Virus record (IMG/VR): IMGVR_UViG_3300022188_000577
Span: 1-11,416 of that record
DNA length: 11,416 bases
Strand: one strand, 5' to 3'
The translations under genes and the position numbers were made by a program. Positions 1-11,416 of this stretch are shown piece after piece (the first letter of the stretch is position 1; every line of letters begins with the position of its first letter). The notes beneath the pieces were generated by a model that saw only the letters and a list, made by a program, of their open reading frames with translations, ran no database searches and was not told the origin of the DNA.

Positions 1-66
1 AGCTTGAAGGTTTAACCGTTATCTGAATGTATGTAGAATCCACATCCAAATCCGTTAGAATTCCTT
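1..66 (+). repeat. Terminal direct repeat, copy 1 (circular assembly overlap)
   Basis: agcttgaagg...ttagaattcctt is identical to 11351-11416. Confidence 0.98.
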
Positions 67-1771: not shown

Positions 1772-2425
1772 TTATATTATTATGATATAGTTATTATCTC
1801 CATACCAATCTATGATTACTTTTTTCGTCATTACGTAACTATTATAGGGTTTTTCAGAATATACGTCAACGATTACGTTTAATATTCTACATAATTCATC
1901 GTAAAACGTATTTTTTGTTATGTTATTATGTATTTCAATACATAAATTTGGCTTGTCTCTCTTTAAAACTTCGTATGCACCTAATAAAACGTTATACTCG
2001 TGTCCTTCCGTATCTATTTTAATAAAATCTACTTTTATGTTATTGAATAAGTTATCAATCGTTTCAGTCTCTACGTCGTAAGTATCTTTTGTTTTAACTT
2101 CTTTATGCTTGTCATCAACTATTGAAGAATGAACTAACGTCTCTTTATCGTAAAACCTCGTTTTTCCTTTTATACTTGATAAAGCTATGTTATAACAAAA
2201 GACTTTCTTATTTAACAATCCCAATTCTTCCATATTTTTAATTAAAATGTTGTATAACTTTTTGTTAGGTTCAAATGCATAAACTTTTTCTGAAATTTGT
2301 GATAAAAAATAAGACCATTGCCCATCTGATGCTCCAATGTCTATTGCCACATTATACTTCTTATCCTTGAAATATTCCTTTATTTTCTTTTCGTGGACAT
2401 TCCATTTAAGTATCTCAATCACCAT
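1772..2425 (-). CDS. FkbM-family SAM-dependent methyltransferase
   Basis: Motifs IDIGASDG, VYAFEPN, NIALS, TIDNL, FIKIDTEGHEYNVLLGA, IEIH. Confidence 0.93.
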   Translation of the reverse strand: MVIEILKWNVHEKKIKEYFKDKKYNVAIDIGASDGQWSYFLSQISEKVYAFEPNKKLYNILIKNMEELGLLNKKVFCYNIALSSIKGKTRFYDKETLVHSSIVDDKHKEVKTKDTYDVETETIDNLFNNIKVDFIKIDTEGHEYNVLLGAYEVLKRDKPNLCIEIHNNITKNTFYDELCRILNVIVDVYSEKPYNSYVMTKKVIIDWYGDNNYIIII

Positions 2426-3123
2426 TTTACCTTATCTAATATATCCTTTTCCGATAACTTTCCTTTAAACTCTATTAGTATAAAGTTATCATACTGTAAA
2501 CAATTATCAATTACTTCAATATATTCCGCATATACTTTTTTTAACATGTCTTTAAATGTTTCCTTTGTTAATTCATTATATGGAAAGTAATCAAATATCT
2601 TTCTAAAAAATACTGAAATCATAAAGGCATTAGTTATCTGCTTCCCCATTGCATACTTGTCAGTTTTATCCCACCAACCCATGTAAGAATTATATACTTC
2701 TTCAACAGGTCTTTTCAACGCTATAACTTTACAATGCTTAAATCTTTCACATATTTCCTTTAAATGTATCCATATGTAAACATCTTTTATTAACCAATTT
2801 CCATCCAATCTATCTATTTCTCTTAATATTCTTAGATAACTCCCTCCTACTTCAATATCTGGATACAAGTTCCAAACCCATTCGTGCATCCATGTTTTTG
2901 CATTTTCATAAATTCGTTCAAGTAATTCTTTTGGTAGCTTATAATAATCGTGGTTAATTTCACCTATTACGTCGTGAGTTAAGCAATTTCCTCTTAACGC
3001 AAACTCTGGATAATCTTTATTGAAAGGTTCATACAATCCATATAAGTTATAATGTTCTTTTAATACTTTATATGTGAATGCTGTTCCCGTTCTCGGAAAA
3101 GAAATTATCATGAACTTAATCAT
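2419..3123 (-). CDS. PAPS-dependent sulfotransferase
   Basis: N-terminal 5'-PSB loop ISFPRTGTAF, then YEPF, and 3'-PB-like motif VIALKRPVEEVYNSY. Overlaps the methyltransferase start by 7 nt. Confidence 0.85.
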   Translation of the reverse strand: MIKFMIISFPRTGTAFTYKVLKEHYNLYGLYEPFNKDYPEFALRGNCLTHDVIGEINHDYYKLPKELLERIYENAKTWMHEWVWNLYPDIEVGGSYLRILREIDRLDGNWLIKDVYIWIHLKEICERFKHCKVIALKRPVEEVYNSYMGWWDKTDKYAMGKQITNAFMISVFFRKIFDYFPYNELTKETFKDMLKKVYAEYIEVIDNCLQYDNFILIEFKGKLSEKDILDKVKW

Positions 3124-3144
3124 GTTAAAAAAATAATTACACTA

Positions 3145-3152
3145 TTTTTAAA
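3145..3152 (-). promoter_or_regulatory. Candidate archaeal TATA box for the sulfotransferase operon
   Basis: TTTAAAAA on the minus strand, 22-29 nt upstream of the ATG at 3123, preceded by purine-rich GGAGAA. Confidence 0.45.
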
Positions 3153-3238
3153 TTCTCCGTCTTTTTAATAATCTTCTTAATAAACTTTTCTTTTCATACA
3201 ATTTCATTATCACATATATTATAAAAAATAATATTAGG

Positions 3239-3532
3239 TTAGCAAGCAAATCTACTACGTTCATTTCTTTGTTCTTCTTCAACTTTTTCTATAAAACTCT
3301 TCACGACGTTCTGGTAAGTATCGAGTATCACTGTAATCGTGTTCAAAGTTGCAAACGCCGATGCATACAGTAATGTTATAGCGTCCATTTCTTGCCCTTT
3401 TTCCTTTAGCTTTTCATTATAAGCTTCTGCTATTTCTTCAAGTAAGCTTACATACTCATCTACTATCTTTTTTAATCTCTTTTTTGATATCTCCTCTGCT
3501 TCTTTGAACCTTCTGTACACTATCATCCTCAT
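3239..3532 (-). CDS. Hypothetical helical/coiled-coil protein, 97 aa
   Basis: ATGA overlap with the upstream gene; charged helical composition. Confidence 0.8.
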   Translation of the reverse strand: MRMIVYRRFKEAEEISKKRLKKIVDEYVSLLEEIAEAYNEKLKEKGQEMDAITLLYASAFATLNTITVILDTYQNVVKSFIEKVEEEQRNERSRFAC

Positions 3533-3801
3533 TTCAATATGAATTCAATTTCTATTCCATCCTTGAACTTAACCCAGATTGTATCGTTCTTTCTTACTTC
3601 ATATGATATACCATCATCCTTTGATTTTGCGTATAATTTGTTATTATGAACGAATAAATCATCTAATTCATCAAGGTTATACTGATCGTCTATCAAAGTT
3701 ATCGATTCTATGTCTTCTTTATTTTTCTTTATATACTCTATAAATTTCCTTATCTTTTCAACTTTTTTTCTATTGAAAAAGTTTGTTATCACGTTTCCCA
3801 T
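3529..3801 (-). CDS. Hypothetical protein, 90 aa
   Basis: ATG preceded by an SD-like GTGA; overlaps both neighbours. Confidence 0.8.
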   Translation of the reverse strand: MGNVITNFFNRKKVEKIRKFIEYIKKNKEDIESITLIDDQYNLDELDDLFVHNNKLYAKSKDDGISYEVRKNDTIWVKFKDGIEIEFILK

Positions 3802-4004
3802 ATTATCACTACAGTTCTATTTCCTTTTTTCTTCGTTTTTATTTCTTCTTTTATTTCTAATTCTTTTACTGCTGAATATACAGCTCCTATCGTTGAATTC
3901 GCTTCTTTCACTATTTCCTTTACCAACTCTGATAATTCTATTTCCTTTATTCCTTTTGCTTTTAACTCATTTATTTTTTTCAAGATGTGTTCTTTCAATG
4001 TCAC
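3789..4004 (-). CDS. Winged helix-turn-helix DNA-binding protein 1 (71 aa from a GTG start)
   Basis: Aligns without gaps to 8883..9089 if it starts at GTG 4004. A TATA/BRE sits 27-34 nt upstream of that GTG, so the track start at 4052 is probably too long. Confidence 0.72.
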   Translation of the reverse strand: MTLKEHILKKINELKAKGIKEIELSELVKEIVKEANSTIGAVYSAVKELEIKEEIKTKKKGNRTVVIIWET

Positions 4005-4030
4005 GTTAATGTTATTTATTATCATCATCA

Positions 4031-4044
4031 TATTTAAATTTTTC
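4031..4044 (-). promoter_or_regulatory. BRE + TATA box for the wHTH1 operon
   Basis: Minus strand reads GAAAAA-TTTAAATA. Confidence 0.6.
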
Positions 4045-4066
4045 TTCATCAACTCGAAAATTAAAC

Positions 4067-4114
4067 AAATTGTTAAACGAATTTTTTGATAAATTGTTTG
4101 ATAAATTATTGAAT
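4067..4114. repeat. Four imperfect tandem 12-bp repeats
   Basis: aaattgttaaac / gaattttttgat / aaattgtttgat / aaattattgaat. Confidence 0.6.
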
Positions 4115-4175
4115 AAATGGTCCATTAGAGTATTTACTTTACAAAAATACTATATTTTATTTAACGACAATTACT

Positions 4176-4183
4176 TTTAATAA
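4176..4183 (+). promoter_or_regulatory. Candidate TATA box for 4209..4421
   Basis: TTTAATAA 26-33 nt upstream of the ATG. Confidence 0.45.
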
Positions 4184-4208
4184 GTTACTTGATACGTTAC
4201 TTATTAAA

Positions 4209-4421
4209 ATGTCTTACAACAAAGTTTCAAAGCTTTTTAAAAGCGTTTCGTGTTTGTTTAAACTGATTGAACTTTTTGAGAGAATTGATAATTTCCAAAA
4301 GGATCTAATTATTATAAAAGAGAGGATTAAATACATTAACGACGAAGTTACAGAAATTAAAAAAGACGTTAAAGAGTTAAGAAAGTTTATTTTCGAAATC
4401 TTAATTAAAAACAAGAAGTAA
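4209..4421 (+). CDS. Small coiled-coil protein, 70 aa
   Basis: Heptad pattern RIDNFQKDLIIIKERIKYINDEVTEIKKDVKELRKFI; upstream TATA box. Confidence 0.7.
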   Translation: MSYNKVSKLFKSVSCLFKLIELFERIDNFQKDLIIIKERIKYINDEVTEIKKDVKELRKFIFEILIKNKK

Positions 4422-4425
4422 TCCA

Positions 4426-4593
4426 TTATTTTATTATCTTAACGATTCTTTCAAACGTTGGTTTGTTCTTTAACATTACTCTAAAGACTTTATTACAATA
4501 AGGACATCTTTTCGTCCAATTGTATTTGTTATTCGATTTTGGTTGATATTTCATTGTTTTATTACAATGTGGGCATTGAACTATTAATATCAT
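4426..4593 (-). CDS. C4 zinc-ribbon protein, 55 aa (absent from the ORF track)
   Basis: Hand translation MILIVQCPHCNKTMKYQPKSNNKYNWTKRCPYCNKVFRVMLKNKPTFERIVKIIK*, with two CPxC motifs. Starts 9 nt after the upstream stop. Confidence 0.85.
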   Translation of the reverse strand: MILIVQCPHCNKTMKYQPKSNNKYNWTKRCPYCNKVFRVMLKNKPTFERIVKIIK

Positions 4594-4602
4594 ATTAACG
4601 AT

Positions 4603-5043
4603 TTATAATAAATAATATTTATTAAGTTGCGACGTTCCTAAGACGAAAGCTTTCTTAAATTCATAAGGTCTTTCATACCTATTGTATATTATTATCTTAT
4701 CTATTTCGTTTAAAATATCAGGGTTTAAGTTATACTTTGAAAACTCTTGCTTGATAATTGATACGTATCTTTCCCTATCAACTTTCCATTTATACTTTAA
4801 TTGCGTTTTGAATAGTTTTTGAGCGTATAACAAGTAAGTTTGTAATTCTATTGGTGTTAAGTTATACTTTTGTAAAACTCTTTTAACAGTTTGTAATATC
4901 CTTTGTTCAAACAAAAAATTAACTGTCCAGTTGTTTTTATATTTCTCAAAGTCTATTTTATCAATCGTGTAATTGTTAACGTAATTGTTAGTTCCTTCAA
5001 TGTCCCAGTTGCACTTTACTTTATAAAATTGCATTTTACTCAT
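4603..5043 (-). CDS. SIRV2-type capsid-fold paralog (putative minor structural protein), 146 aa
   Basis: VKRVLQKYNLTPIELQTYLLYAQKL...FSKYNLNPDILNEI matches the MCP C-terminal bundle (VGAILDSHGVPPNQRPFYINVAREV...WISRGLDPAIIDEI) and is clearly paralogous to 10878..11273. Confidence 0.78.
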   Translation of the reverse strand: MSKMQFYKVKCNWDIEGTNNYVNNYTIDKIDFEKYKNNWTVNFLFEQRILQTVKRVLQKYNLTPIELQTYLLYAQKLFKTQLKYKWKVDRERYVSIIKQEFSKYNLNPDILNEIDKIIIYNRYERPYEFKKAFVLGTSQLNKYYLL

Positions 5044-5057
5044 TGTTTAATTATGTT

Positions 5058-5146
5058 ACCCTTGATTTATAAACATTGAACCCTATGTGACCACTTGCCC
5101 TGTAATCCGACATGACCCTTGACTTAAATACTTTGAACCCTGCGTG
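5058..5146. repeat. Two 32-bp direct repeats, 57-bp period (5058-5089 and 5115-5146)
   Basis: acccttgatttataaacattgaaccctatgtg vs acccttgacttaaatactttgaaccctgcgtg, 26/32 identical. Confidence 0.85.
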
Positions 5147-5534
5147 TTACACTTACTTTATTCATAATCATTATTATCTTTAACTTCTTCGCCATCTCGA
5201 ATAGGTCTTTATACTTATTGACGTCTATATCGTGTTTTTTAATGAAATCAAGTATGTTTTGATAAATTAACTCAAAAGTTTTGTTTGTAAACTTTCTATG
5301 CTTGTAAACTATTTTTTTACAAAACGAAAACGTTAGCATTGCGTCCCACGACGTCCATTCACACCTTTCTATCTTTCTATTTGCATAATCTATAAAGTGT
5401 TTTTCAACTTCTAACTGATAAGCTAATTCATAATATACTTTATCATATGTTAACTCCTTTACTTTTGAAAATATGAGTTCCTGTTGTTGCTTGTTAAACT
5501 TGTTATAAGCTCTTTTTAAAGAATATTTAAGCAT
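5124..5534 (-). CDS. Divergent capsid-fold paralog, 136 aa (possibly 160 aa via a +1 shift, ending at 5051)
   Basis: TAATG coupling to the upstream gene. FSFCKKIVYKHRKFTNKTF...IKKHDID resembles MCP INVAREVYRLSRKFAGQTL...ISRGLD. Confidence 0.65.
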   Translation of the reverse strand: MLKYSLKRAYNKFNKQQQELIFSKVKELTYDKVYYELAYQLEVEKHFIDYANRKIERCEWTSWDAMLTFSFCKKIVYKHRKFTNKTFELIYQNILDFIKKHDIDVNKYKDLFEMAKKLKIIMIMNKVSVTRRVQSI

Positions 5535-6415
5535 TAAAAACCTCTACTTTGTCTATATTCTCTTAATACATCAAATTGAGTCGAATATGTAACTATTACA
5601 TGTTTTGCTATATCCTTATACCTTCTAACAAAATAATCTAATATCCTAAACAATTTCATTTTAACCCTATTTAAATAGTATCTTTTTCTTTCGTTTATTC
5701 TTTGCATTTTTCTTGTTAAATACTTTCTCATCCAATCTTCATAATTATCAACATACCTTTTTCTATACTCCAAGTATCTAACTTTATATCTCAATTTATA
5801 ATATGCTCTGTATACTTTGTTTTCCTTTGCTTTGTTAACTAAATCATTTAATGTGCTTATCAACTCAGAAGCTTTTGTTTTGTCATGTTCTTTATTAATT
5901 AATTTTTCATAATATTCAAGAGTATCCTCATATGCGTCTATTATTTTTAAATGTATATCATATGTTTTGTGTTGTTTTAACATATTCTTAAACGACTCAA
6001 CATCGTTTTTATAGTCATTTATTATCGATTCAATTTCGTTTAAAACCTCTTTTGCTTTATCATAATTTTTTGATTTAATTAAGTTTTTAACAAGCTCAAA
6101 CTTATTTCTTATTAAGTAATTTCTATCTCTTAATCTTCTTTCAACTGAATCAAGATCAACACCTCTTGCTTTTTGATACATATGTATGTAGAAAGGTAAA
6201 TTATCTATACAAAACCATACAGCCATTACAATTATTGAAATTAGTGCTGGGTTTATATCTATTCTATTTTCATCAATTATATATTGAAAATCTTTGTATC
6301 TTGATTTTAATCTGCTTAAAATTTCGTCATATTTTCTTATTATCTTATATCTTATTGAATCATATTTTCCTAAATAATACATTAATCTCTGTTCTGCTTC
6401 TTTTCCGGATATCAT
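5534..6415 (-). CDS. Basic alpha-helical protein, 293 aa, probably structural or DNA-binding
   Basis: Long ORF directly downstream of the MCP; rich in K/R/Y; helical. N-terminus (RLMYYLGKYD) weakly recalls the MCP N-terminal arm. Confidence 0.75.
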   Translation of the reverse strand: MISGKEAEQRLMYYLGKYDSIRYKIIRKYDEILSRLKSRYKDFQYIIDENRIDINPALISIIVMAVWFCIDNLPFYIHMYQKARGVDLDSVERRLRDRNYLIRNKFELVKNLIKSKNYDKAKEVLNEIESIINDYKNDVESFKNMLKQHKTYDIHLKIIDAYEDTLEYYEKLINKEHDKTKASELISTLNDLVNKAKENKVYRAYYKLRYKVRYLEYRKRYVDNYEDWMRKYLTRKMQRINERKRYYLNRVKMKLFRILDYFVRRYKDIAKHVIVTYSTQFDVLREYRQSRGF

Positions 6416-6421
6416 TATAAT

Positions 6422-6431
6422 AAAAAATAAA
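6422..6431 (-). terminator. Candidate archaeal oligo(T) terminator after the MCP gene
   Basis: TTTATTTTTT 15 nt after the stop; the same motif follows 8883..9089. Confidence 0.4.
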
Positions 6432-6446
6432 GTTAGTTAGATGCTA

Positions 6447-6809
6447 TTAATAGACGCAAGTTATTCCAAATAACGCCAAAATCTCGTCAATTATGGCTGG
6501 GTCTAAACCTCTTGAAATCCACTTGCTTCTTACTATGCAAGCCTCGTTAGTTAACGTTTGCCCTGCAAATTTCCTTGATAACCTGTAAACTTCTCTTGCA
6601 ACATTGATATAGAAAGGTCTTTGGTTTGGAGGAACTCCGTGCGAGTCTAAAATAGCACCTACTTGAGTTTCTATTGTTGCTAAGTTGCTAAATTGTGTAT
6701 CAACTTGCTCTACCATTATATCCTTTAACGCTGTAAATCTACTTTGAATTACTGTTGGGTCGACTTTTGCTTCATACTTTTTCTTCCTATATACGTCAGA
6801 CCTTACCAT
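6447..6809 (-). CDS. Major capsid protein, SIRV2/AFV1-type (Adnaviria helical MCP), 120 aa
   Basis: Basic N-terminal arm RSDVYRKKKYEAKVDPTV, then V-x-A-I-L-x-x-x-G-V...R-x-x-Y and a terminal GLDPAIIDEI. As I recall it, this parallels the rudivirus coat pattern (RYAKWQAKF...NPTV...VSAVLTQYGI...NRAIY...NPQVLDAV). Has its own strong TATA box and a downstream T-tract. Confidence 0.85.
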   Translation of the reverse strand: MVRSDVYRKKKYEAKVDPTVIQSRFTALKDIMVEQVDTQFSNLATIETQVGAILDSHGVPPNQRPFYINVAREVYRLSRKFAGQTLTNEACIVRSKWISRGLDPAIIDEILALFGITCVY

Positions 6810-6850: not shown

Positions 6851-6890
6851 TTGTTGTTTCACTTTTGAGTTATCAAGAACCCATTGTGTT

Positions 6891-6903
6891 CAAAATTTAT
6901 AAA
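6891..6903 (+). promoter_or_regulatory. BRE + TATA box of the divergent zinc-finger operon
   Basis: CAAAA-TTTATAAA; TATA is 23-30 nt upstream of ATG 6926. Confidence 0.65.
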
Positions 6904-6925
6904 TGAAAGGTCATGTTGGTATATT

Positions 6926-7084
6926 ATGTCAAAGGTAACCTTGTGTCCCAGATGTAATAATAATATGAAGAGTATTTATATTAAGAGAGGAGGAAAGTAC
7001 GTTATCATAGGAAAAATTTGTTTAAATTGCAAGTTATACTTCTTTTATGATATTGATACCAAAGGAAAACGTGATAAGACTTGA
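6926..7084 (+). CDS. C4 zinc-ribbon protein, 52 aa
   Basis: MSKVTLCPRC...ICLNC. ATG 6926 fits the TATA spacing; the track start at 6884 lies upstream of the promoter. Confidence 0.78.
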   Translation: MSKVTLCPRCNNNMKSIYIKRGGKYVIIGKICLNCKLYFFYDIDTKGKRDKT

Positions 7085-7412
7085 GGAAAACAAGTGTATT
7101 AGAAAGTTAGAGGACTTGTTAGACGCTGAAATAAAGACTTTAGAAAAGTTCATTAACAAAGCTTCTGAAGTTAAAAGAAGATTGTATAAGTTAGATTTAG
7201 ACGAAGACGTTAAAAAAAATGTGTTATCTGCTTACGATGAGATAGTAAGTAAGTATGTTTACGAGAATGTAATTAAAAACATCGTTTATTACACTTTATT
7301 AATATGTTACGCCAAAGTTCTAAAAGAAAAACGAAAGTTATTTTGTTATGAGGATTCAAAAGGTGCAATATACGTTCATTACCTCCCTCACATAAAAGAG
7401 TTGCAAAAATAA
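7047..7412 (+). CDS. Hypothetical helical protein, 121 aa
   Basis: ATG start, overlaps the zinc-finger gene, typical composition. Confidence 0.78.
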   Translation: MILIPKENVIRLEENKCIRKLEDLLDAEIKTLEKFINKASEVKRRLYKLDLDEDVKKNVLSAYDEIVSKYVYENVIKNIVYYTLLICYAKVLKEKRKLFCYEDSKGAIYVHYLPHIKELQK

Positions 7413-7435: not shown

Positions 7436-8596
7436 TTAAGTAGATAAATGTAACAAGAATTTTGGATAATTGTTTTCCGCGAGAAACTTATCGTAATACT
7501 TTTTAGTTGCTTTTCTCTTTTTTTCTGTTAAATCTTGATTCTTATAAGCTTTTAACATAGTTTTTGCTAATTCAGAAGCTTCGTATTCGTAGTATTCGCA
7601 CATAAATCCATGTTCGTTTGGTTTTTGTATTATCGATTCATAATCAAAGAAATACGCAACGTCTTCTCTTATTAACTCTTTAAACAATTGATGTTTAACG
7701 CATATTACACAGTTATTAAAATATAAAGATTCTGCAATTGGCATGCAAAAACCTTCTGACTTTGAAGAAACAACATAAACTTTACTTACATTGTATAAAC
7801 TCAATATTTCCTTATAGGATAAGCTTCCTCCTAAATCAAGTTGTATTATCCTTTTCTTTTCTATTAACTTTTTTATGAATTTGTGTTGCTTTAAGTTGTA
7901 ATCTGTTATTAAAACGTGCACGGTATCTTCTATCTTGTTTTTTAAACAATGTTTATAAAACATAGTTAAAGCTTTTACGTATTTATCCCATCCTTTTCTT
8001 GTATTTTTGTTTGCATTTGTCATATAAACGAACTTATCAGTTAAATCAACGTTATAGTTTTCTTTAAAGAATTCATACGCCCAATCTTTTAGTTTTTTGG
8101 CATCATTTATATAACTTTTTGGTATGGAGTGATAAATTACGTCTGTTATTTTTACGTCGTGTTTTCTTATTATGTTGTAAGTGTAATAAGAATTTGCTAT
8201 TATTTTAGCATACTTTGAAATATTTTGTAGATTTAACTTCAAAAGTAAGTTTTTGTATAAAGTGTCTCCTTCGACTGTGTAATATATGATATTTCTTTTT
8301 TTAGTTGACATTGAAATAACGTGAGTTAAGTTCGAAACGTAAAAAGAACCAAGAGGAACTATGAATATTCTTTTATCAAATAGTTGCATCTTTCTTATAA
8401 AGTTAGAAGATAAAGAATTTTCAAATATGTCAATGTATGCGTGAATTTGATTTTGTTTTAATATCTCAGAAATCGTTTCTGCTACGTTTTTAAAAGATAT
8501 AGCGTCTACGTAAAAAATAGCAACCGTTGACGATTTCAAATCGTCCAAATAATCTGATATCGATTGTGAAAGAGTGGTGTCGTCTCGCCACTTCAT
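7436..8596 (-). CDS. GT-B fold glycosyltransferase, family GT4
   Basis: IANSYYT, VIYHSI, RKGWD and the signature VVSSKSEGFCMPIAES (E-x7-E). GT4 enzymes are common in rudiviruses and lipothrixviruses. Confidence 0.92.
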   Translation of the reverse strand: MKWRDDTTLSQSISDYLDDLKSSTVAIFYVDAISFKNVAETISEILKQNQIHAYIDIFENSLSSNFIRKMQLFDKRIFIVPLGSFYVSNLTHVISMSTKKRNIIYYTVEGDTLYKNLLLKLNLQNISKYAKIIANSYYTYNIIRKHDVKITDVIYHSIPKSYINDAKKLKDWAYEFFKENYNVDLTDKFVYMTNANKNTRKGWDKYVKALTMFYKHCLKNKIEDTVHVLITDYNLKQHKFIKKLIEKKRIIQLDLGGSLSYKEILSLYNVSKVYVVSSKSEGFCMPIAESLYFNNCVICVKHQLFKELIREDVAYFFDYESIIQKPNEHGFMCEYYEYEASELAKTMLKAYKNQDLTEKKRKATKKYYDKFLAENNYPKFLLHLST

Positions 8597-8604
8597 TTTT
8601 CATC

Positions 8605-8640
8605 AAACTTTTAAAAAAATTATCGAACAAATTTTTCAAT
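8605..8640. repeat. Three imperfect tandem 12-bp repeats resembling 4067-4114
   Basis: aaacttttaaaa / aaattatcgaac / aaatttttcaat. Confidence 0.45.
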
Positions 8641-8657
8641 CTTTTTTAATCATCTAA

Positions 8658-8806
8658 CAGTTGTGATTTTATTATTAGTTTTATTATACAATACTTCAGG
8701 ATATATATTAGCAAAAAATCAATAGTATTGTATTATAGTAGTAATAATTAATTAAAGTAATTATCAAATAGTTAATTAATTAAATTAAAAAATAAAATCA
8801 CTACTG
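8658..8806. repeat. Nested inverted repeats in the longest intergenic region (candidate origin)
   Basis: Outer pair 8658-8673/8791-8806 (15/16). Inner pairs 8682-8695/8724-8737 (13/14) and 8745-8755/8772-8782 (11/11). Confidence 0.75.
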
Positions 8807-8843
8807 AGTTAAAAAAAATCTGTCGATTTTCGGATAACACACC

Positions 8844-8858
8844 GCAAAGGTTTAATAT
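8844..8858 (+). promoter_or_regulatory. BRE + TATA box for the wHTH2 operon
   Basis: GCAAAGG-TTTAATAT; TATA is 25-32 nt upstream of ATG 8883. Confidence 0.7.
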
Positions 8859-8882
8859 GCTAAAGCTAATAATAAAATAACC

Positions 8883-9089
8883 ATGAACGTGAAGCAACTT
8901 GTATTACTACTGCTACAAGATTATAAGGACATGGGGGTTACCAAAATAGAGGAAAGGGTATTGGTAGAGGAAGTTATAAAGAGAACAGGATGTCACAGGC
9001 AGACTGTGTATAACGTAATACATTGGTTAAAAGTTAGAGGTGTAATAAGGGTTGAAGGCTCGGGTAGGAACAAGTTTATCTTACTTTAA
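8883..9089 (+). CDS. Winged helix-turn-helix DNA-binding protein 2, 68 aa
   Basis: LVEEVIKRTGCHRQTVYNVIHWLKVRGVIRVEG is a typical HTH recognition helix followed by L-x-x-x-G-x-I and a wing. Confidence 0.85.
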   Translation: MNVKQLVLLLLQDYKDMGVTKIEERVLVEEVIKRTGCHRQTVYNVIHWLKVRGVIRVEGSGRNKFILL

Positions 9090-9110: not shown

Positions 9111-9863
9111 ATGAAGTATCGTTATAGGGATATAACATATAGACTTAAAAGGTACAAACTGTACTGGAAACAAAGACTTTATTATATTTTAGTTGATTTG
9201 ATAAAAGAACGCGCGTCTGAAAGGTTATTAGATGAATTAACTAAGCAAATGTTTTTTGAGTGGATTGTTATTCCTAAACTAAAATCTTTAGGATTTACAG
9301 ACGAAGAGTTAAGGAGAATGTTTCCTTCATATCTCGGATATGCAAAGAAGTTGTGGAACAAAAAATACAAGTATGTTTTTTCTTCTTTAGACGTTGAACA
9401 CGATAACGTTTATTACGAAATGATTCAAAGAGGATTCGATAAAGAAAAGAGTAAAACAGCGTTAAATATTGGTAGAAAACATCCTGTCGTTGCAAAAGCT
9501 TATATTAAAGTTTCGTCAACTCCTTTAATTTATCCACCCCTTCTAAAAGCACTTCCCGTTTCTACTAAATTTAGTTACGAAATAGTTCCACCAATATTAG
9601 TATCAAAAGAGTTAAAAACTAAATTTAGTTACAAATTAACTCCACCTTTAACTGTTGAAAAAGAAATTAACGTATCTTTTAATTACTCTCTAGTCCCACC
9701 TTTGGAAGTTGAAAAAGAAATTAACGTGTCTTTTAACTATTCGCTTGTTCCACCAATCAAAATATCGAAAGAAGTTAACGTATCTTTTAATTACGAACTA
9801 GTTCCACCCTTAAAAGTTATAAAAGAAATTGAAATTATATTTAACTATGAAATTACAAGCTAA
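9111..9863 (+). CDS. Capsid-fold N-terminal domain fused to six 18-aa repeats (putative terminal/fibre anchor), 250 aa
   Basis: VIPKLKSLGF...PSYLGYAKKLWNKKYKY...MIQRGFD matches the paralog pattern; C-terminal repeats of the type VPPLEVEKEINVSFNYSL. Confidence 0.78.
   Translation: MKYRYRDITYRLKRYKLYWKQRLYYILVDLIKERASERLLDELTKQMFFEWIVIPKLKSLGFTDEELRRMFPSYLGYAKKLWNKKYKYVFSSLDVEHDNVYYEMIQRGFDKEKSKTALNIGRKHPVVAKAYIKVSSTPLIYPPLLKALPVSTKFSYEIVPPILVSKELKTKFSYKLTPPLTVEKEINVSFNYSLVPPLEVEKEINVSFNYSLVPPIKISKEVNVSFNYELVPPLKVIKEIEIIFNYEITS
9531..9854 (+). repeat. Six tandem 54-bp coding repeats
   Basis: YPPLLKALPVSTKFSYEI / VPPILVSKELKTKFSYKL / TPPLTVEKEINVSFNYSL / VPPLEVEKEINVSFNYSL / VPPIKISKEVNVSFNYEL / VPPLKVIKEIEIIFNYEI. 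Confidence 0.95.
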
Positions 9864-10866
9864 GGTAATACTGAAAATAATAAAAAAAGACGGTAGGGAA
9901 GTAGTTATCGAAAAAGAGTGCAATAGTTTTCACGAAAACTTTTTCAGAATGTTAAAGTCTGTGTATACGAATGACTTAGTTATAACGAATAGGGATGGTT
10001 CAACAACAACTTTAAATCACTTCGAAAAAGTAAGCATTATAAACACAGACGGAACGAAATACACGAAATGGAGGATTGCAATAGGACAAGGAATTTCAGA
10101 TAACGATTTAACGACAATTATCGACGAAAAAGACGCTACAGTTGAATTAGACGAAGCTAACAGAGTTGCAACTGATTACGCAAAGTTTGGTCCTTACTCA
10201 GAATCAAAAACGATTGACGCCGTAGCACTTTATGTAAAAACTAACTTTAGTTCTGGTGCGGGAAAGTTTGCTTGGTCTTTTAACGCACCTTTGCTTTTGG
10301 AAAATGTCGGGACAACGACGATAGAGGCTGGAGACGTTTTAGTAGTTGGAATACAAACTAAGTTAGTCGCAGGGACAAACGTAACGATTCACGATTCTTT
10401 TGTCTATGTTTCTTTATCGTTTTTAGCGTATTACATGATTGAATACGAATATTCACCTGTGGGCGATGACCAACTTCAAATAGCTTCAAAATATAAAGAT
10501 TTAGCTTTGAGTGGTAACGCAGACTACTGGGCTTATTACGATAGTTATTACGACGAAAAACTCGATTTCTTGAATCATTCAGCAGAAATGAAAATTTATC
10601 ATTCTGATGGGACTTCTGTAACTGAATCTGCAACTGCAACGATTGATTTAACTAATAGAAAAGTTATAATCTACGCTTCTCACTTTTATTCAGAATCAAA
10701 GACAGTGACGAAAGTAGAACTTTACATTCGTTTAAAAGGATGGTATTATAGCGATGGATGGGTGCAAGGCGCGTTGTATCACAAACTTTTAACTGCAGAT
10801 AACTTGAACGTAACAGTGGACGTTAACTACACGTTTAAACCAAAGTTTGAAATATCTATACCTTAA
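9847..10866 (+). CDS. Beta-rich putative virion terminal-structure protein with an internal duplication, 339 aa
   Basis: Likely start is ATG 9847. Two related halves, each containing NR...YA...YSESKT(I/V)..V.LY. IAIGQG recalls tail-fibre/baseplate N-terminal domains. Confidence 0.75.
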   Translation: MKLQAKVILKIIKKDGREVVIEKECNSFHENFFRMLKSVYTNDLVITNRDGSTTTLNHFEKVSIINTDGTKYTKWRIAIGQGISDNDLTTIIDEKDATVELDEANRVATDYAKFGPYSESKTIDAVALYVKTNFSSGAGKFAWSFNAPLLLENVGTTTIEAGDVLVVGIQTKLVAGTNVTIHDSFVYVSLSFLAYYMIEYEYSPVGDDQLQIASKYKDLALSGNADYWAYYDSYYDEKLDFLNHSAEMKIYHSDGTSVTESATATIDLTNRKVIIYASHFYSESKTVTKVELYIRLKGWYYSDGWVQGALYHKLLTADNLNVTVDVNYTFKPKFEISIP

Positions 10867-10877
10867 CGAAAATATTT

Positions 10878-11273
10878 ATGACGTGTAAACATTGGAACTT
10901 TCAAGGATACTTTAAGTATAAGCAAAGTTGGACTGACGAAAGGTTAAAAGAGAAAATTGAACCAATTGTAGATAGAATTATAAATAAGTGGAAATCTTGG
11001 CAAATAAGGTTGGACTTTTGCTTAAACAACGTTAAAAGAGTTTTAGATAGATTTGACATAACATCCGTTCAAAGAAAATATTATTTACTTTATGCTATTT
11101 TATTATGGTCTGTAATGTTTTTGTATGAATGGTTGGTCGATAGGAAAAGAGAACATTCTATTTTGAGATATAAGTTCGAAAGTTACGGCTTAGATCCGAA
11201 CATTCTAAACGAAATAGATAGAGTTGTTATATGGAACAAAGTTATTCAGCCTGTTAACAGGTTTTGGGAATAA
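10878..11273 (+). CDS. SIRV2-type capsid-fold paralog (putative minor structural protein), 131 aa
   Basis: VKRVLDRFDITSVQRKYYLLYA...KFESYGLDPNILNEID matches both the MCP and 4603..5043. Confidence 0.8.
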   Translation: MTCKHWNFQGYFKYKQSWTDERLKEKIEPIVDRIINKWKSWQIRLDFCLNNVKRVLDRFDITSVQRKYYLLYAILLWSVMFLYEWLVDRKREHSILRYKFESYGLDPNILNEIDRVVIWNKVIQPVNRFWE

Positions 11274-11350: not shown

Positions 11351-11416
11351 AGCTTGAAGGTTTAACCGTTATCTGAATGTATGTAGAATCCACATCCAAA
11401 TCCGTTAGAATTCCTT
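11351..11416 (+). repeat. Terminal direct repeat, copy 2 (circular assembly overlap)
   Basis: Identical to 1-66. Confidence 0.98.

What the first reader, a model, noticed from the sequence alone, without database searches (positions are those of the whole stretch)
8658..8806. Three-way nested inverted repeat: candidate origin, packaging or linearisation site
Seen: in the longest (286 bp) and extremely AT-rich intergenic region, an outer stem cagttgtgattttatt/aataaaatcactactg encloses two hairpins, tattatacaatact/agtattgtattata and taattaattaa/ttaattaatta. The structure is flanked by the 12-bp array and the wHTH2 promoter. Inference: a branched cruciform or a symmetric protein-binding platform. 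With no Rep gene visible, it is the best candidate for the origin, or for the site where the circle is opened or capsid assembly nucleates. A structured ncRNA is an alternative.
Basis: partly seen in the sequence, partly recalled or inferred. Interest (0 to 1): 0.6.

Follow-up and report, generated by a model that had tools for sequence, protein, structure and literature searches.

The report
Boxed AT-rich operator and probable origin
The nested inverted repeat is real: it is the best-folding and most easily melted stretch of this small, circular-mapping archaeal filamentous-virus genome, but it reads best as three copies of a protein-binding box around an unwinding tract (an operator and probably the replication origin), not as a proven cruciform, packaging or cutting site.

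Summary
At 8658-8806 an outer stem (15/16) encloses two hairpins (13/14 and 11/11). The 149 nt fold far better than shuffles (z -4.4 as DNA, -4.9 and -4.7 as RNA; 0 of 200 shuffles). It has the lowest folding energy of the whole 11.35-kb genome although it has the lowest GC (16%), and it is also the least stable duplex.

Two things change the picture. First, the left arm has a second, equally good partner (8861-8886), which lies between the TATA-like box and the ATG of the adjacent 68-aa winged-helix gene. Second, hairpin 2 is simply two direct copies of a self-complementary 12-mer. So the "stems" look like repeated binding boxes.

Best reading (confidence 0.4, inferred): a viral winged-helix protein binds three boxes, represses its own operon, and brackets a 117-bp, 14%-GC unwinding tract where host machinery starts replication.

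No Rep gene, canonical mini-ORB, dif site or Rfam family was found, and GC skew gives no signal. All six other assemblies (five contigs, one 98.6-99.8% variant genome) carry an identical region, so covariation could not be tested. There is no evidence for a packaging or linearisation role.

Context: the capsid protein has the SIRV2 fold, yet the genome maps as a circle, whereas its relatives are linear with inverted terminal repeats.

The parts
8597..8882 (.). Divergent 286-nt intergenic region between the glycosyltransferase gene (minus strand) and the winged-helix gene (plus strand). It is the longest non-coding stretch, at 19.6% GC.
8658..8678 (+). It reads CAGTTGTGATTTTATTATTAG towards the centre.
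8786..8806 (-). Box S2, the right arm of the outer stem. It is inverted relative to S1: 15/16 complementary over the outer 16 nt, with an exact 11-nt core AATAAAATCAC.
8861..8886 (-). Box S3, a third copy in the same orientation as S2. 8866-8881 matches the reverse complement of S1 at 15 of 16 positions. It lies between the TATA-like box and the ATG of the 68-aa gene and runs over the start codon.
   Evidence: (I2)
8674..8790 (.). 117-bp core between the boxes, 13.7% GC. It contains the least stable duplex windows of the whole genome and is the candidate DNA-unwinding element.
8682..8737 (.). Hairpin 1, or dyad: arms 8682-8695 and 8724-8737, 13/14 complementary, 28-nt spacer.
8744..8788 (.). 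Hairpin 2, which is two direct copies (spacing 28) of a self-complementary TTAATTAATTAA-type palindrome.
   Evidence: (D1, I12)
8852..8859 (+). TATA-like box TTTAATAT, 24-31 nt upstream of the ATG at 8883. The spacing matches that of the TATA-like boxes before the capsid gene and the 146-aa gene, which implies a nearly leaderless mRNA (inferred).
8883..9089 (+).
   Evidence: weak TrmB/HTH matches; pLDDT 87; winged-helix folds
8628..8651 (.). Left flank. It holds a TATA-like A/T run resembling the region upstream of the 87-aa winged-helix gene (17 of 25 by eye) and a 2-copy 10-bp repeat at 8632-8651. It is the probable promoter area of the glycosyltransferase gene (inferred).
7436..8596 (-). 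GT1-family glycosyltransferase gene, transcribed leftwards from the region.

Best explanation
The element is most likely a double-stranded DNA control module, not a structure that must fold.

A 16-21-bp box occurs three times in the divergent intergenic region. S1 and S2 face each other across a 117-bp, 14%-GC tract that is the easiest DNA in the genome to melt. S3 sits between the TATA-like box and the start codon of the adjacent 68-aa winged-helix gene.

Proposed mechanism:
1. A sequence-specific protein binds the boxes. The best candidate is that winged-helix protein; the 87-aa one at 3789-4052 is the alternative.
2. Binding at S3 blocks RNA polymerase recruitment, so the protein represses its own operon.
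3. Binding at S1 and S2 brackets, and possibly loops, the AT tract.
4. Because the virus encodes no recognisable replication protein, host machinery opens that tract to start replication of the circular genome.
5. The inner 'hairpins' are dyad or palindromic binding sites.

Shown: the repeats and their statistics, the duplex-stability minimum, the promoter geometry, the winged-helix fold, and the absence of Rep-like domains. Inferred: protein binding, autoregulation and origin function.
For: - The box occurs three times. Two independent 16-nt inverted-repeat pairs with at most 1 mismatch share the left arm, against 0 of 500 shuffles with two such pairs.
- S3 lies exactly between the TATA-like box and the ATG. 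From general knowledge, this is the usual position of archaeal repressor sites.
- The next gene folds as a winged helix. Its structural neighbours include DNA-binding repressors, the viral proteins F93 and F-112, the AspA centromere-binding protein, and the MCM and ORC winged-helix domains.
- The core is the least stable duplex at 60, 100 and 150-nt windows: about 3.1-3.3 sd less negative than the mean (that is, less stable) and clear of the runner-up.
- It lies in the longest intergenic region, between divergent genes.
- No ORF matches a replication protein.
- Other viruses encoding related SIRV2-type capsid proteins also carry repeated boxes in their long intergenic regions. L011 has a TTTTCACATATGTGAAAA palindrome, seen in three sites by the repeat finder and in four by the core-motif count, three of them just upstream of called genes. 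L287 has at least 9 direct TGTGAACAT repeats.
- The stems need long loops (28, 16 and 117 nt). With RNA parameters the fold is gone between 70 and 80 C, and the sample is a hot hydrothermal one. Both argue against a folded form being the active one.
Against: - No relative carries a diverged copy, so neither box conservation nor covariation could be tested. All six other copies of the region are 100% identical.
- There is no canonical mini-ORB core (consensus from PMC1904270).
- The GC-skew minimum is about 2 kb away, and the skew tracks gene strand.
- There are only three boxes. S3 has GTTA where S1 and S2 have GTGA.
- The winged-helix fold is generic, and 68 aa is small for an initiator.
- AT-rich promoter regions are often the least stable DNA for reasons unrelated to replication.
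- No read or transcript data could be obtained.
Confidence: 0.4

Rival explanations
1. Structured RNA. Either (a) a long 5' leader of the winged-helix operon, in which the left arm pairs alternatively with S2 or with S3 just before the start codon and so switches translation, or (b) a separate small non-coding RNA.
For: The RNA folds are as exceptional as the DNA fold (z -4.9 on the + strand, -4.65 on the - strand). In a 261-nt + strand fold the left arm pairs with S3 next to the ATG. The + strand has no T-run of 5 or more inside the element. TATA-like runs exist upstream, at 8609-8620.
Against: No Rfam family matches at E <= 1. The proximal TATA-like box at 8852-8859 predicts a nearly leaderless mRNA that would exclude the element. 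Both mismatches are T:T (A:A on the other strand), so no G-U pairs point to a strand. The - strand carries T6 runs that would stop archaeal RNA polymerase (general knowledge). There is no covariation or transcript data.
Confidence: 0.15
2. The three-way junction acts as single-stranded or extruded DNA. It would be an origin of the single-strand-origin or rolling-hairpin kind, or a nick or priming site, like the single-strand origins (sso) of rolling-circle (RCR) plasmids, the Ff phage intergenic hairpins or the T-shaped parvovirus terminal hairpin.
For: This is the best ssDNA fold in the genome. Its size and shape (149 nt, one stem enclosing two hairpins) resemble those elements (comparison from memory). 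The genome is small and circular-mapping with no polymerase.
Against: No HUH or other nickase domain was found in any ORF. The capsid protein has the SIRV2 fold, which in the solved virions wraps double-stranded A-form DNA. The left arm has two alternative partners. Long loops and all-AT stems are unfavourable for cruciform extrusion and melt by 70-80 C in the RNA-parameter calculation.
Confidence: 0.12
3. Packaging-nucleation site, fold-back tip, or the site where the circle is linearised for encapsidation.
For: It is the only large symmetric non-coding element. Relatives by capsid protein are linear with inverted terminal repeats, so a circular replicative form might need opening. The second least stable region (3097-3246) lies roughly opposite on the circle.
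Against: All seven assemblies cross the region intact. The two full-length contigs end at different, unrelated places: window position 1 and position 3424. There is no similarity to the relatives' terminal repeats. No packaging signal is known for this virus realm (from memory). The antipodal coincidence is weak, at roughly 1 in 5 given how few intergenic regions there are.
Confidence: 0.08
4. No dedicated function. Either a decayed mobile element of the MITE type (miniature inverted-repeat transposable element, bounded by terminal inverted repeats) or repeat-prone AT-rich filler.
For: A 149-bp unit bounded by 16-bp inverted repeats is MITE-like. Hairpin 2 is low-complexity.
Against: No target-site duplication flanks it. 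No second copy exists in the genome. Scans of viral, genome and metagenome collections gave only single chance hits or the same virus. The statistics exclude chance. The region is invariant, while variable patches of the 98.6-99.8% variant end 24 nt to its left.
Confidence: 0.08
5. Site-specific recombination site: dimer resolution by a host XerA-type recombinase, or an attachment site.
For: Circular replicons need dimer resolution. The region is dyad-rich and non-coding.
Against: There is no match to the Thermococcales dif consensus, even with 3 mismatches allowed (consensus from PMC4640148). There is no integrase gene and no tRNA-like sequence. The host is unknown, so its own dif site could not be compared.
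Confidence: 0.05

Closest known systems
Archaeal chromosomal origins (ORB - AT-rich unwinding element - inverted ORB, bound by Orc1/Cdc6)
   Same: Inverted recognition boxes flank an AT-rich, easily melted tract in a long non-coding region. The architecture is as described in PMC1904270 and PMC4640148.
   Different: The boxes lack the conserved TTCC and GAA core of ORB and mini-ORB, and no mini-ORB cluster occurs anywhere in the genome. There is no orc1/cdc6 gene next to it. There are only two flanking boxes plus one on a promoter.
Iteron-plasmid origins with an autoregulated winged-helix initiator (such as F RepE or pPS10 RepA; from memory)
   Same: Repeated boxes lie next to an AT-rich tract, a further copy overlaps the promoter of the adjacent winged-helix gene, and no other replication gene is present.
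   Different: The boxes are not a tandem direct array. The protein has 68 aa and a single winged helix, and it shows no sequence match to Rep families. The host is archaeal.
Control region of the circular Sulfolobus spindle-shaped virus SSV1 (divergent T5/T6/Tind promoters with repeated operator boxes bound by the small repressor F55; from memory)
   Same: A divergent promoter region of a small circular archaeal virus genome with repeated boxes that overlap a core promoter. It is also the suspected origin.
   Different: The boxes and the regulator fold are unrelated (F55 is ribbon-helix-helix). Nothing has been tested here.
Ff phage intergenic region and the single-strand origins (sso) of rolling-circle (RCR) plasmids (from memory)
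   Same: The longest non-coding region of a small circular genome of a filamentous virus, holding the strongest nucleic-acid fold in the genome.
   Different: Those elements act in single-stranded DNA and depend on a nickase. No such gene is present, and the capsid protein is of the type that coats double-stranded DNA.
Parvovirus / AAV T-shaped terminal hairpin (from memory)
   Same: A three-way junction of about 145-150 nt: one stem enclosing two small hairpins.
   Different: Here it is internal in a circular map, not terminal. There is no Rep or NS1 gene, and the stem arm has an alternative partner.

Membership tests
Archaeal ORB/mini-ORB origin | Repeated boxes with the conserved mini-ORB core (TTCC...GAA, e.g. 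TTCCAGTGGAAAT; PMC1904270) | tested here: not met
   3 matches at 3 mismatches, fewer than the 4.5 expected from shuffles, and none in the intergenic region. The boxes read CAGTWGTGATTTTATT.
Archaeal ORB/mini-ORB origin | Inverted boxes flanking an AT-rich unwinding element | tested here: met
Archaeal ORB/mini-ORB origin | Adjacent orc1/cdc6 initiator gene, or demonstrated Orc1 binding | tested here: not met
   No AAA+ or Orc domain in any ORF. Binding cannot be tested with these tools.
Rolling-circle double-strand or single-strand origin | HUH Rep or nickase gene in the replicon | tested here: not met
Rolling-circle double-strand or single-strand origin | Strong, orientation-specific ssDNA fold in a non-coding region | tested here: inconclusive
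   The fold is the best in the genome, but both strands fold about equally well and no function can be tested.
Iteron-type origin with autoregulated initiator | Tandem direct iterons (3 or more) | tested here: not met
   Three boxes in mixed orientation, spaced 128 and 80 bp apart
Iteron-type origin with autoregulated initiator | A box or operator overlapping the promoter of the adjacent DNA-binding gene | tested here: met
   S3 lies between the TATA-like box and the ATG. Binding itself was not tested.
Parvovirus-type terminal hairpin | Located at the end of a linear genome, with a Rep-binding element | tested here: not met
   It is internal in a circular map, and there is no Rep.
MITE / small transposable element | Terminal inverted repeats plus a target-site duplication plus multiple copies | tested here: not met
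   Terminal inverted repeats are present, but there is no duplication. No further paired copies appear.
Known RNA families (Rfam 15), tRNA/tmRNA | Covariance-model or ARAGORN match | tested here: not met
XerA/dif dimer-resolution site (Thermococcales type) | Two 11-bp inverted arms separated by 6 bp that match the consensus (PMC4640148) | tested here: not met
   0 matches at 3 mismatches or fewer. The host's own dif site is unknown.
Adnaviria-type filamentous virus (context of the element) | SIRV2-fold major capsid protein | tested here: met
   The 120-aa protein passes the Pfam cut-offs for PF12193 and PF25647. The model (pLDDT 85) has SIRV2, SSRV1, SFV1 and AFV1 capsid proteins as its top PDB matches.
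Adnaviria-type filamentous virus (context of the element) | Linear genome with inverted terminal repeats | tested here: not met
   A 66-nt direct terminal repeat lies inside an ORF. A second assembly is circularly permuted. Relatives G002 and G003 do have inverted terminal repeats. Physical topology was not tested.

The most novel reading that the evidence does not exclude
This is the first circular-genome member of the SIRV2-capsid (Adnaviria-type) filamentous viruses. It has no replication genes, and this single boxed AT-rich element serves as the host-dependent origin. It may also be the point where the circle folds back or is opened for packaging into a rod, with the second AT-rich intergenic region (3124-3238) roughly opposite on the circle marking the other tip.
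Probability: 0.1. Interest if true: 0.7.

Novelty: new member of a known kind. Interest (0 to 1): 0.4.

Why it matters
If the boxes and the AT tract are the operator and origin, they would be the only cis-acting replication and regulation element identified for an uncultivated hydrothermal-vent virus lineage that has no close relatives. This virus pairs the capsid protein of linear filamentous archaeal viruses with a circular map and no replication genes. The element would give a concrete handle for binding assays, for origin mapping, and for asking how a circular genome can be handled by a capsid type known only from linear DNA. As a sequence feature alone it is an ordinary kind of thing: an AT-rich, repeat-bearing control region between divergent genes.

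Tried and rejected
- **Covariation.** Five further contigs (L003, L005, L006, L007, L255) have a 100% identical region, so no test was possible.
- **Relatives through proteins.** The glycosyltransferase and the 250-aa protein have no relatives in the 5.8-billion-protein word search. The 345-aa protein has one, at 81% identity, on a 1.1-kb contig without the region. IMG/VR scans with these proteins found nothing. The large profile search was used once, on the capsid paralogs, because the word searches had left relatives open. It gave 278 family members, but their contigs share no intergenic similarity with this region.
- **A wide capsid alignment** (A3) was too diverged for the locus scan, so a narrower one (A4) was used.
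- **MITE idea.** The pattern was too short to be decisive. The paired-arm scan of metagenomes found only the same virus plus chance pairs.
- **Canonical mini-ORB and Thermococcales dif:** absent.
- **The palindrome seen in relative L011:** absent here.
- **Bacterial promoter and terminator scan:** not informative for an archaeal virus.
- **Fused-telomere idea.** The three dyads have different centres (8732, 8709.5 and 8763.5), and nothing resembles the relatives' terminal repeats. This is not supported.
- **DNA-parameter folding above 60 C** gave nonsensical energies and was ignored.
- **Two scripts timed out**.
- **136-aa protein as a capsid paralog:** not supported.

Full report
**What the window is.** The window is a complete IMG/VR virus record of 11,416 nt whose first and last 66 nt are identical. 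The repeat lies inside an open reading frame that continues across the junction. A second assembly from a sibling sample (L255, 11,830 nt, 98.6-99.8% identical) is the same genome, circularly permuted to start at window position 3424. The map is therefore a circle of 11,350 bp at 29.5% GC.

Genes run leftwards from 8596 and rightwards from 8883, apart from a short plus-strand island at 6884-7412. The 120-aa protein (6447-6809) passes the Pfam cut-offs for the rudivirus and lipothrixvirus coat families. Its model (pLDDT 85) has the SIRV2, SSRV1, SFV1 and AFV1 capsid proteins as its top PDB matches. Relatives found through this protein (43-45% identity) are 20-33 kb, and two of the three carry inverted terminal repeats. 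The published hydrothermal-vent families with this capsid fold are likewise linear (PMC9894754; PMC12934983, supplement).

None of the 21 ORFs matches a replication protein, integrase or nickase. What is recognisable is a GT1 glycosyltransferase, an FkbM methyltransferase, a sulfotransferase-like protein, zinc ribbons and two small winged-helix proteins.

**The observation.** All three inverted repeats are at the stated coordinates.
- The outer stem is 15/16, with a T:T mismatch at 8662/8802.
- Hairpin 1 is 13/14, with a T:T mismatch at 8685/8734 and a 28-nt loop.
- Hairpin 2 is 11/11, with a 16-nt loop.

The 149 nt fold to -20.0 kcal/mol as ssDNA (z -4.35), -31.2 as + strand RNA (z -4.91) and -26.5 as - strand RNA (z -4.65). 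None of 200 dinucleotide shuffles does as well in any of the three. This window has the lowest energy of all 1,135 windows although its GC (16%) is the lowest, and it has the largest GC-corrected deviation, -3.8 sd.

1. The left arm has two partners. Besides 8786-8806 (S2), it is complementary to 8861-8881 (S3). 8866-8881 is the reverse complement of 8663-8678 at 15 of 16 positions (I2). Two independent 16-nt inverted-repeat pairs with at most one mismatch never occurred in 500 shuffles of the 286-nt region, and one occurred in only 9.
2. S3 lies between a TATA-like box (8852-8859) and the ATG (8883) of the 68-aa winged-helix gene. That box sits at the same distance from its start codon as the TATA-like boxes before the capsid gene and the 146-aa gene.
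3. Hairpin 2 consists of two direct copies, 28 bp apart, of a self-complementary 12-mer (D1). It is as much a pair of palindromic sites as a hairpin.
4. The 117-bp core between S1 and S2 (13.7% GC) holds the least stable duplex of the genome at 60, 100 and 150-nt windows. It is 3.1-3.3 sd less stable than the mean and well clear of the runner-up.
5. In a longer RNA fold the left arm switches to S3. In the ssDNA fold it stays with S2.
6. With RNA parameters the whole fold disappears between 70 and 80 C. The source metagenome is hydrothermal and contains hyperthermophile genomes.

**Conservation.** The region is 100% identical in five further contigs from JGI, ENA and Logan assemblies. It is also identical in the variant genome L255, whose 124 differences are clustered. 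One cluster (8378-8573, the N-terminus of the glycosyltransferase) ends 24 nt before the intergenic region. Because the differences are clustered, the invariance has little statistical weight, and no covariation test is possible.

The closest other virus is L011 (capsid protein 74% identical) and a second virus from the same sample is L287; neither shares intergenic sequence with the window. Both nonetheless carry their own repeated boxes. L011 has a TTTTCACATATGTGAAAA palindrome at three sites by the repeat finder, and at four by the core-motif count, three of them just upstream of called genes. L287 has at least nine direct TGTGAACAT repeats in a 755-nt intergenic region that also holds its least stable duplex. 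Repeated protein-binding boxes in the long non-coding region are therefore a shared habit of viruses with this capsid type.

**Tests of specific identities.**
- No Rfam family and no tRNA.
- No mini-ORB core (consensus from PMC1904270).
- No Thermococcales-type dif site (consensus from PMC4640148).
- No target-site duplication and no other copy in viral, genome or metagenome collections beyond the same virus.
- Cumulative GC skew bottoms at about 6400-6800 and follows gene orientation, so it gives no independent origin signal.
- The 68-aa protein folds confidently as a winged helix (pLDDT 87). Its neighbours are generic: an MCM C-terminal winged helix, BlaI, STIV F93, SSV1 F-112, AspA and an ORC winged helix.

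**Interpretation.** The simplest account of three copies of one box, one of them on a core promoter next to a winged-helix gene, is a protein-binding platform on double-stranded DNA. The simplest account of two inverted boxes bracketing the most meltable tract of a replicon that has no replication genes is an origin used by host machinery. The two are compatible, as in plasmids whose initiator also represses its own promoter (comparison from memory). I commit to this combined model at 0.4. Protein binding, autoregulation and origin function are all inferred.

The rivals are listed with their tests:
- a leader or small RNA that uses the alternative pairings (0.15);
- a true single-stranded three-way junction acting as origin (0.12);
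- a packaging, fold-back or opening site (0.08);
- a non-functional or mobile remnant (0.08);
- a recombination site (0.05).

**Limits.** The host is unknown. No genetic code other than table 11 was needed.

Noticed in passing
window 1-66 = 11351-11416; L255 (whole): A virus with a SIRV2-fold capsid protein maps as an 11.35-kb circle. The direct terminal repeat lies inside an ORF, and a second assembly is circularly permuted. Two of its three IMG/VR relatives by capsid protein, and the published families with this capsid fold, are linear with inverted terminal repeats. The physical topology is untested.
   Followed up: partly
window 6447-6809 (-), 4603-5043 (-), 10878-11273 (+), 9111-9500 (+): There is one clear capsid gene plus three probable paralogs (hhalign probability 75-81%, E about 1e-5), an unusually high number for 11 kb. 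The 136-aa protein (5124-5534) is not supported as a paralog.
   Followed up: partly
window 9606-9848: Four to five tandem 54-nt (18-aa) repeats form the C-terminal half of the 250-aa protein, whose N-terminus resembles the capsid protein.
   Followed up: no
window 4061-4118 and 4175-4209: Upstream of the other winged-helix gene (3789-4052, minus strand) there are true 12-bp tandem repeats (about 3 copies) and an 11-bp perfect inverted repeat ending at the start of the 70-aa ORF. This is the second-ranked region in the GC-corrected folding scan.
   Followed up: no
window 3501-3800, 8378-8573, 10001-10250 (versus L255): The 124 differences from the sibling-sample variant are confined to a few patches: two small ORFs, the N-terminus of the glycosyltransferase and part of the 345-aa protein. 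The rest of the genome is almost identical, which suggests recombination cassettes or targeted diversification.
   Followed up: partly
L287 555-1105; L011 255-278, 761-784, 2749-2774, 3203-3216: Other viruses with a related capsid protein (L287 from the window's own sample, L011 from an ENA assembly that also holds the window's virus) carry repeated boxes with a shared TGTGA core. L287 has at least 9 direct TGTGAACAT repeats in a 755-nt intergenic region. L011 has palindromes, three of them just upstream of called genes. The window's boxes contain TTGTGAT and TAGTGAT.
   Followed up: partly
window 3097-3246 (intergenic 3124-3238): The second least stable duplex region of the genome lies almost opposite the element on the circle: the element's antipode is 3057 and this region is centred near 3172. 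Because there are only a few intergenic regions, the coincidence is weak.
   Followed up: no
window 1772-3123 and 7436-8596: The genome encodes an FkbM-type methyltransferase, a sulfotransferase-like protein and a GT1 glycosyltransferase, probably for modifying virion or host glycans.
   Followed up: no
window 4209-4421 (+) and 4214-4426 (-): Two 70-aa ORFs overlap almost exactly on opposite strands. Gene callers chose the plus-strand one, which is coiled-coil-like.
   Followed up: no
L011 1403-1741: The closest relative's contig encodes a small protein with a Cas Csx3 domain hit (precomputed Pfam). It may be a virus-borne ring-nuclease-type anti-CRISPR.
   Followed up: no
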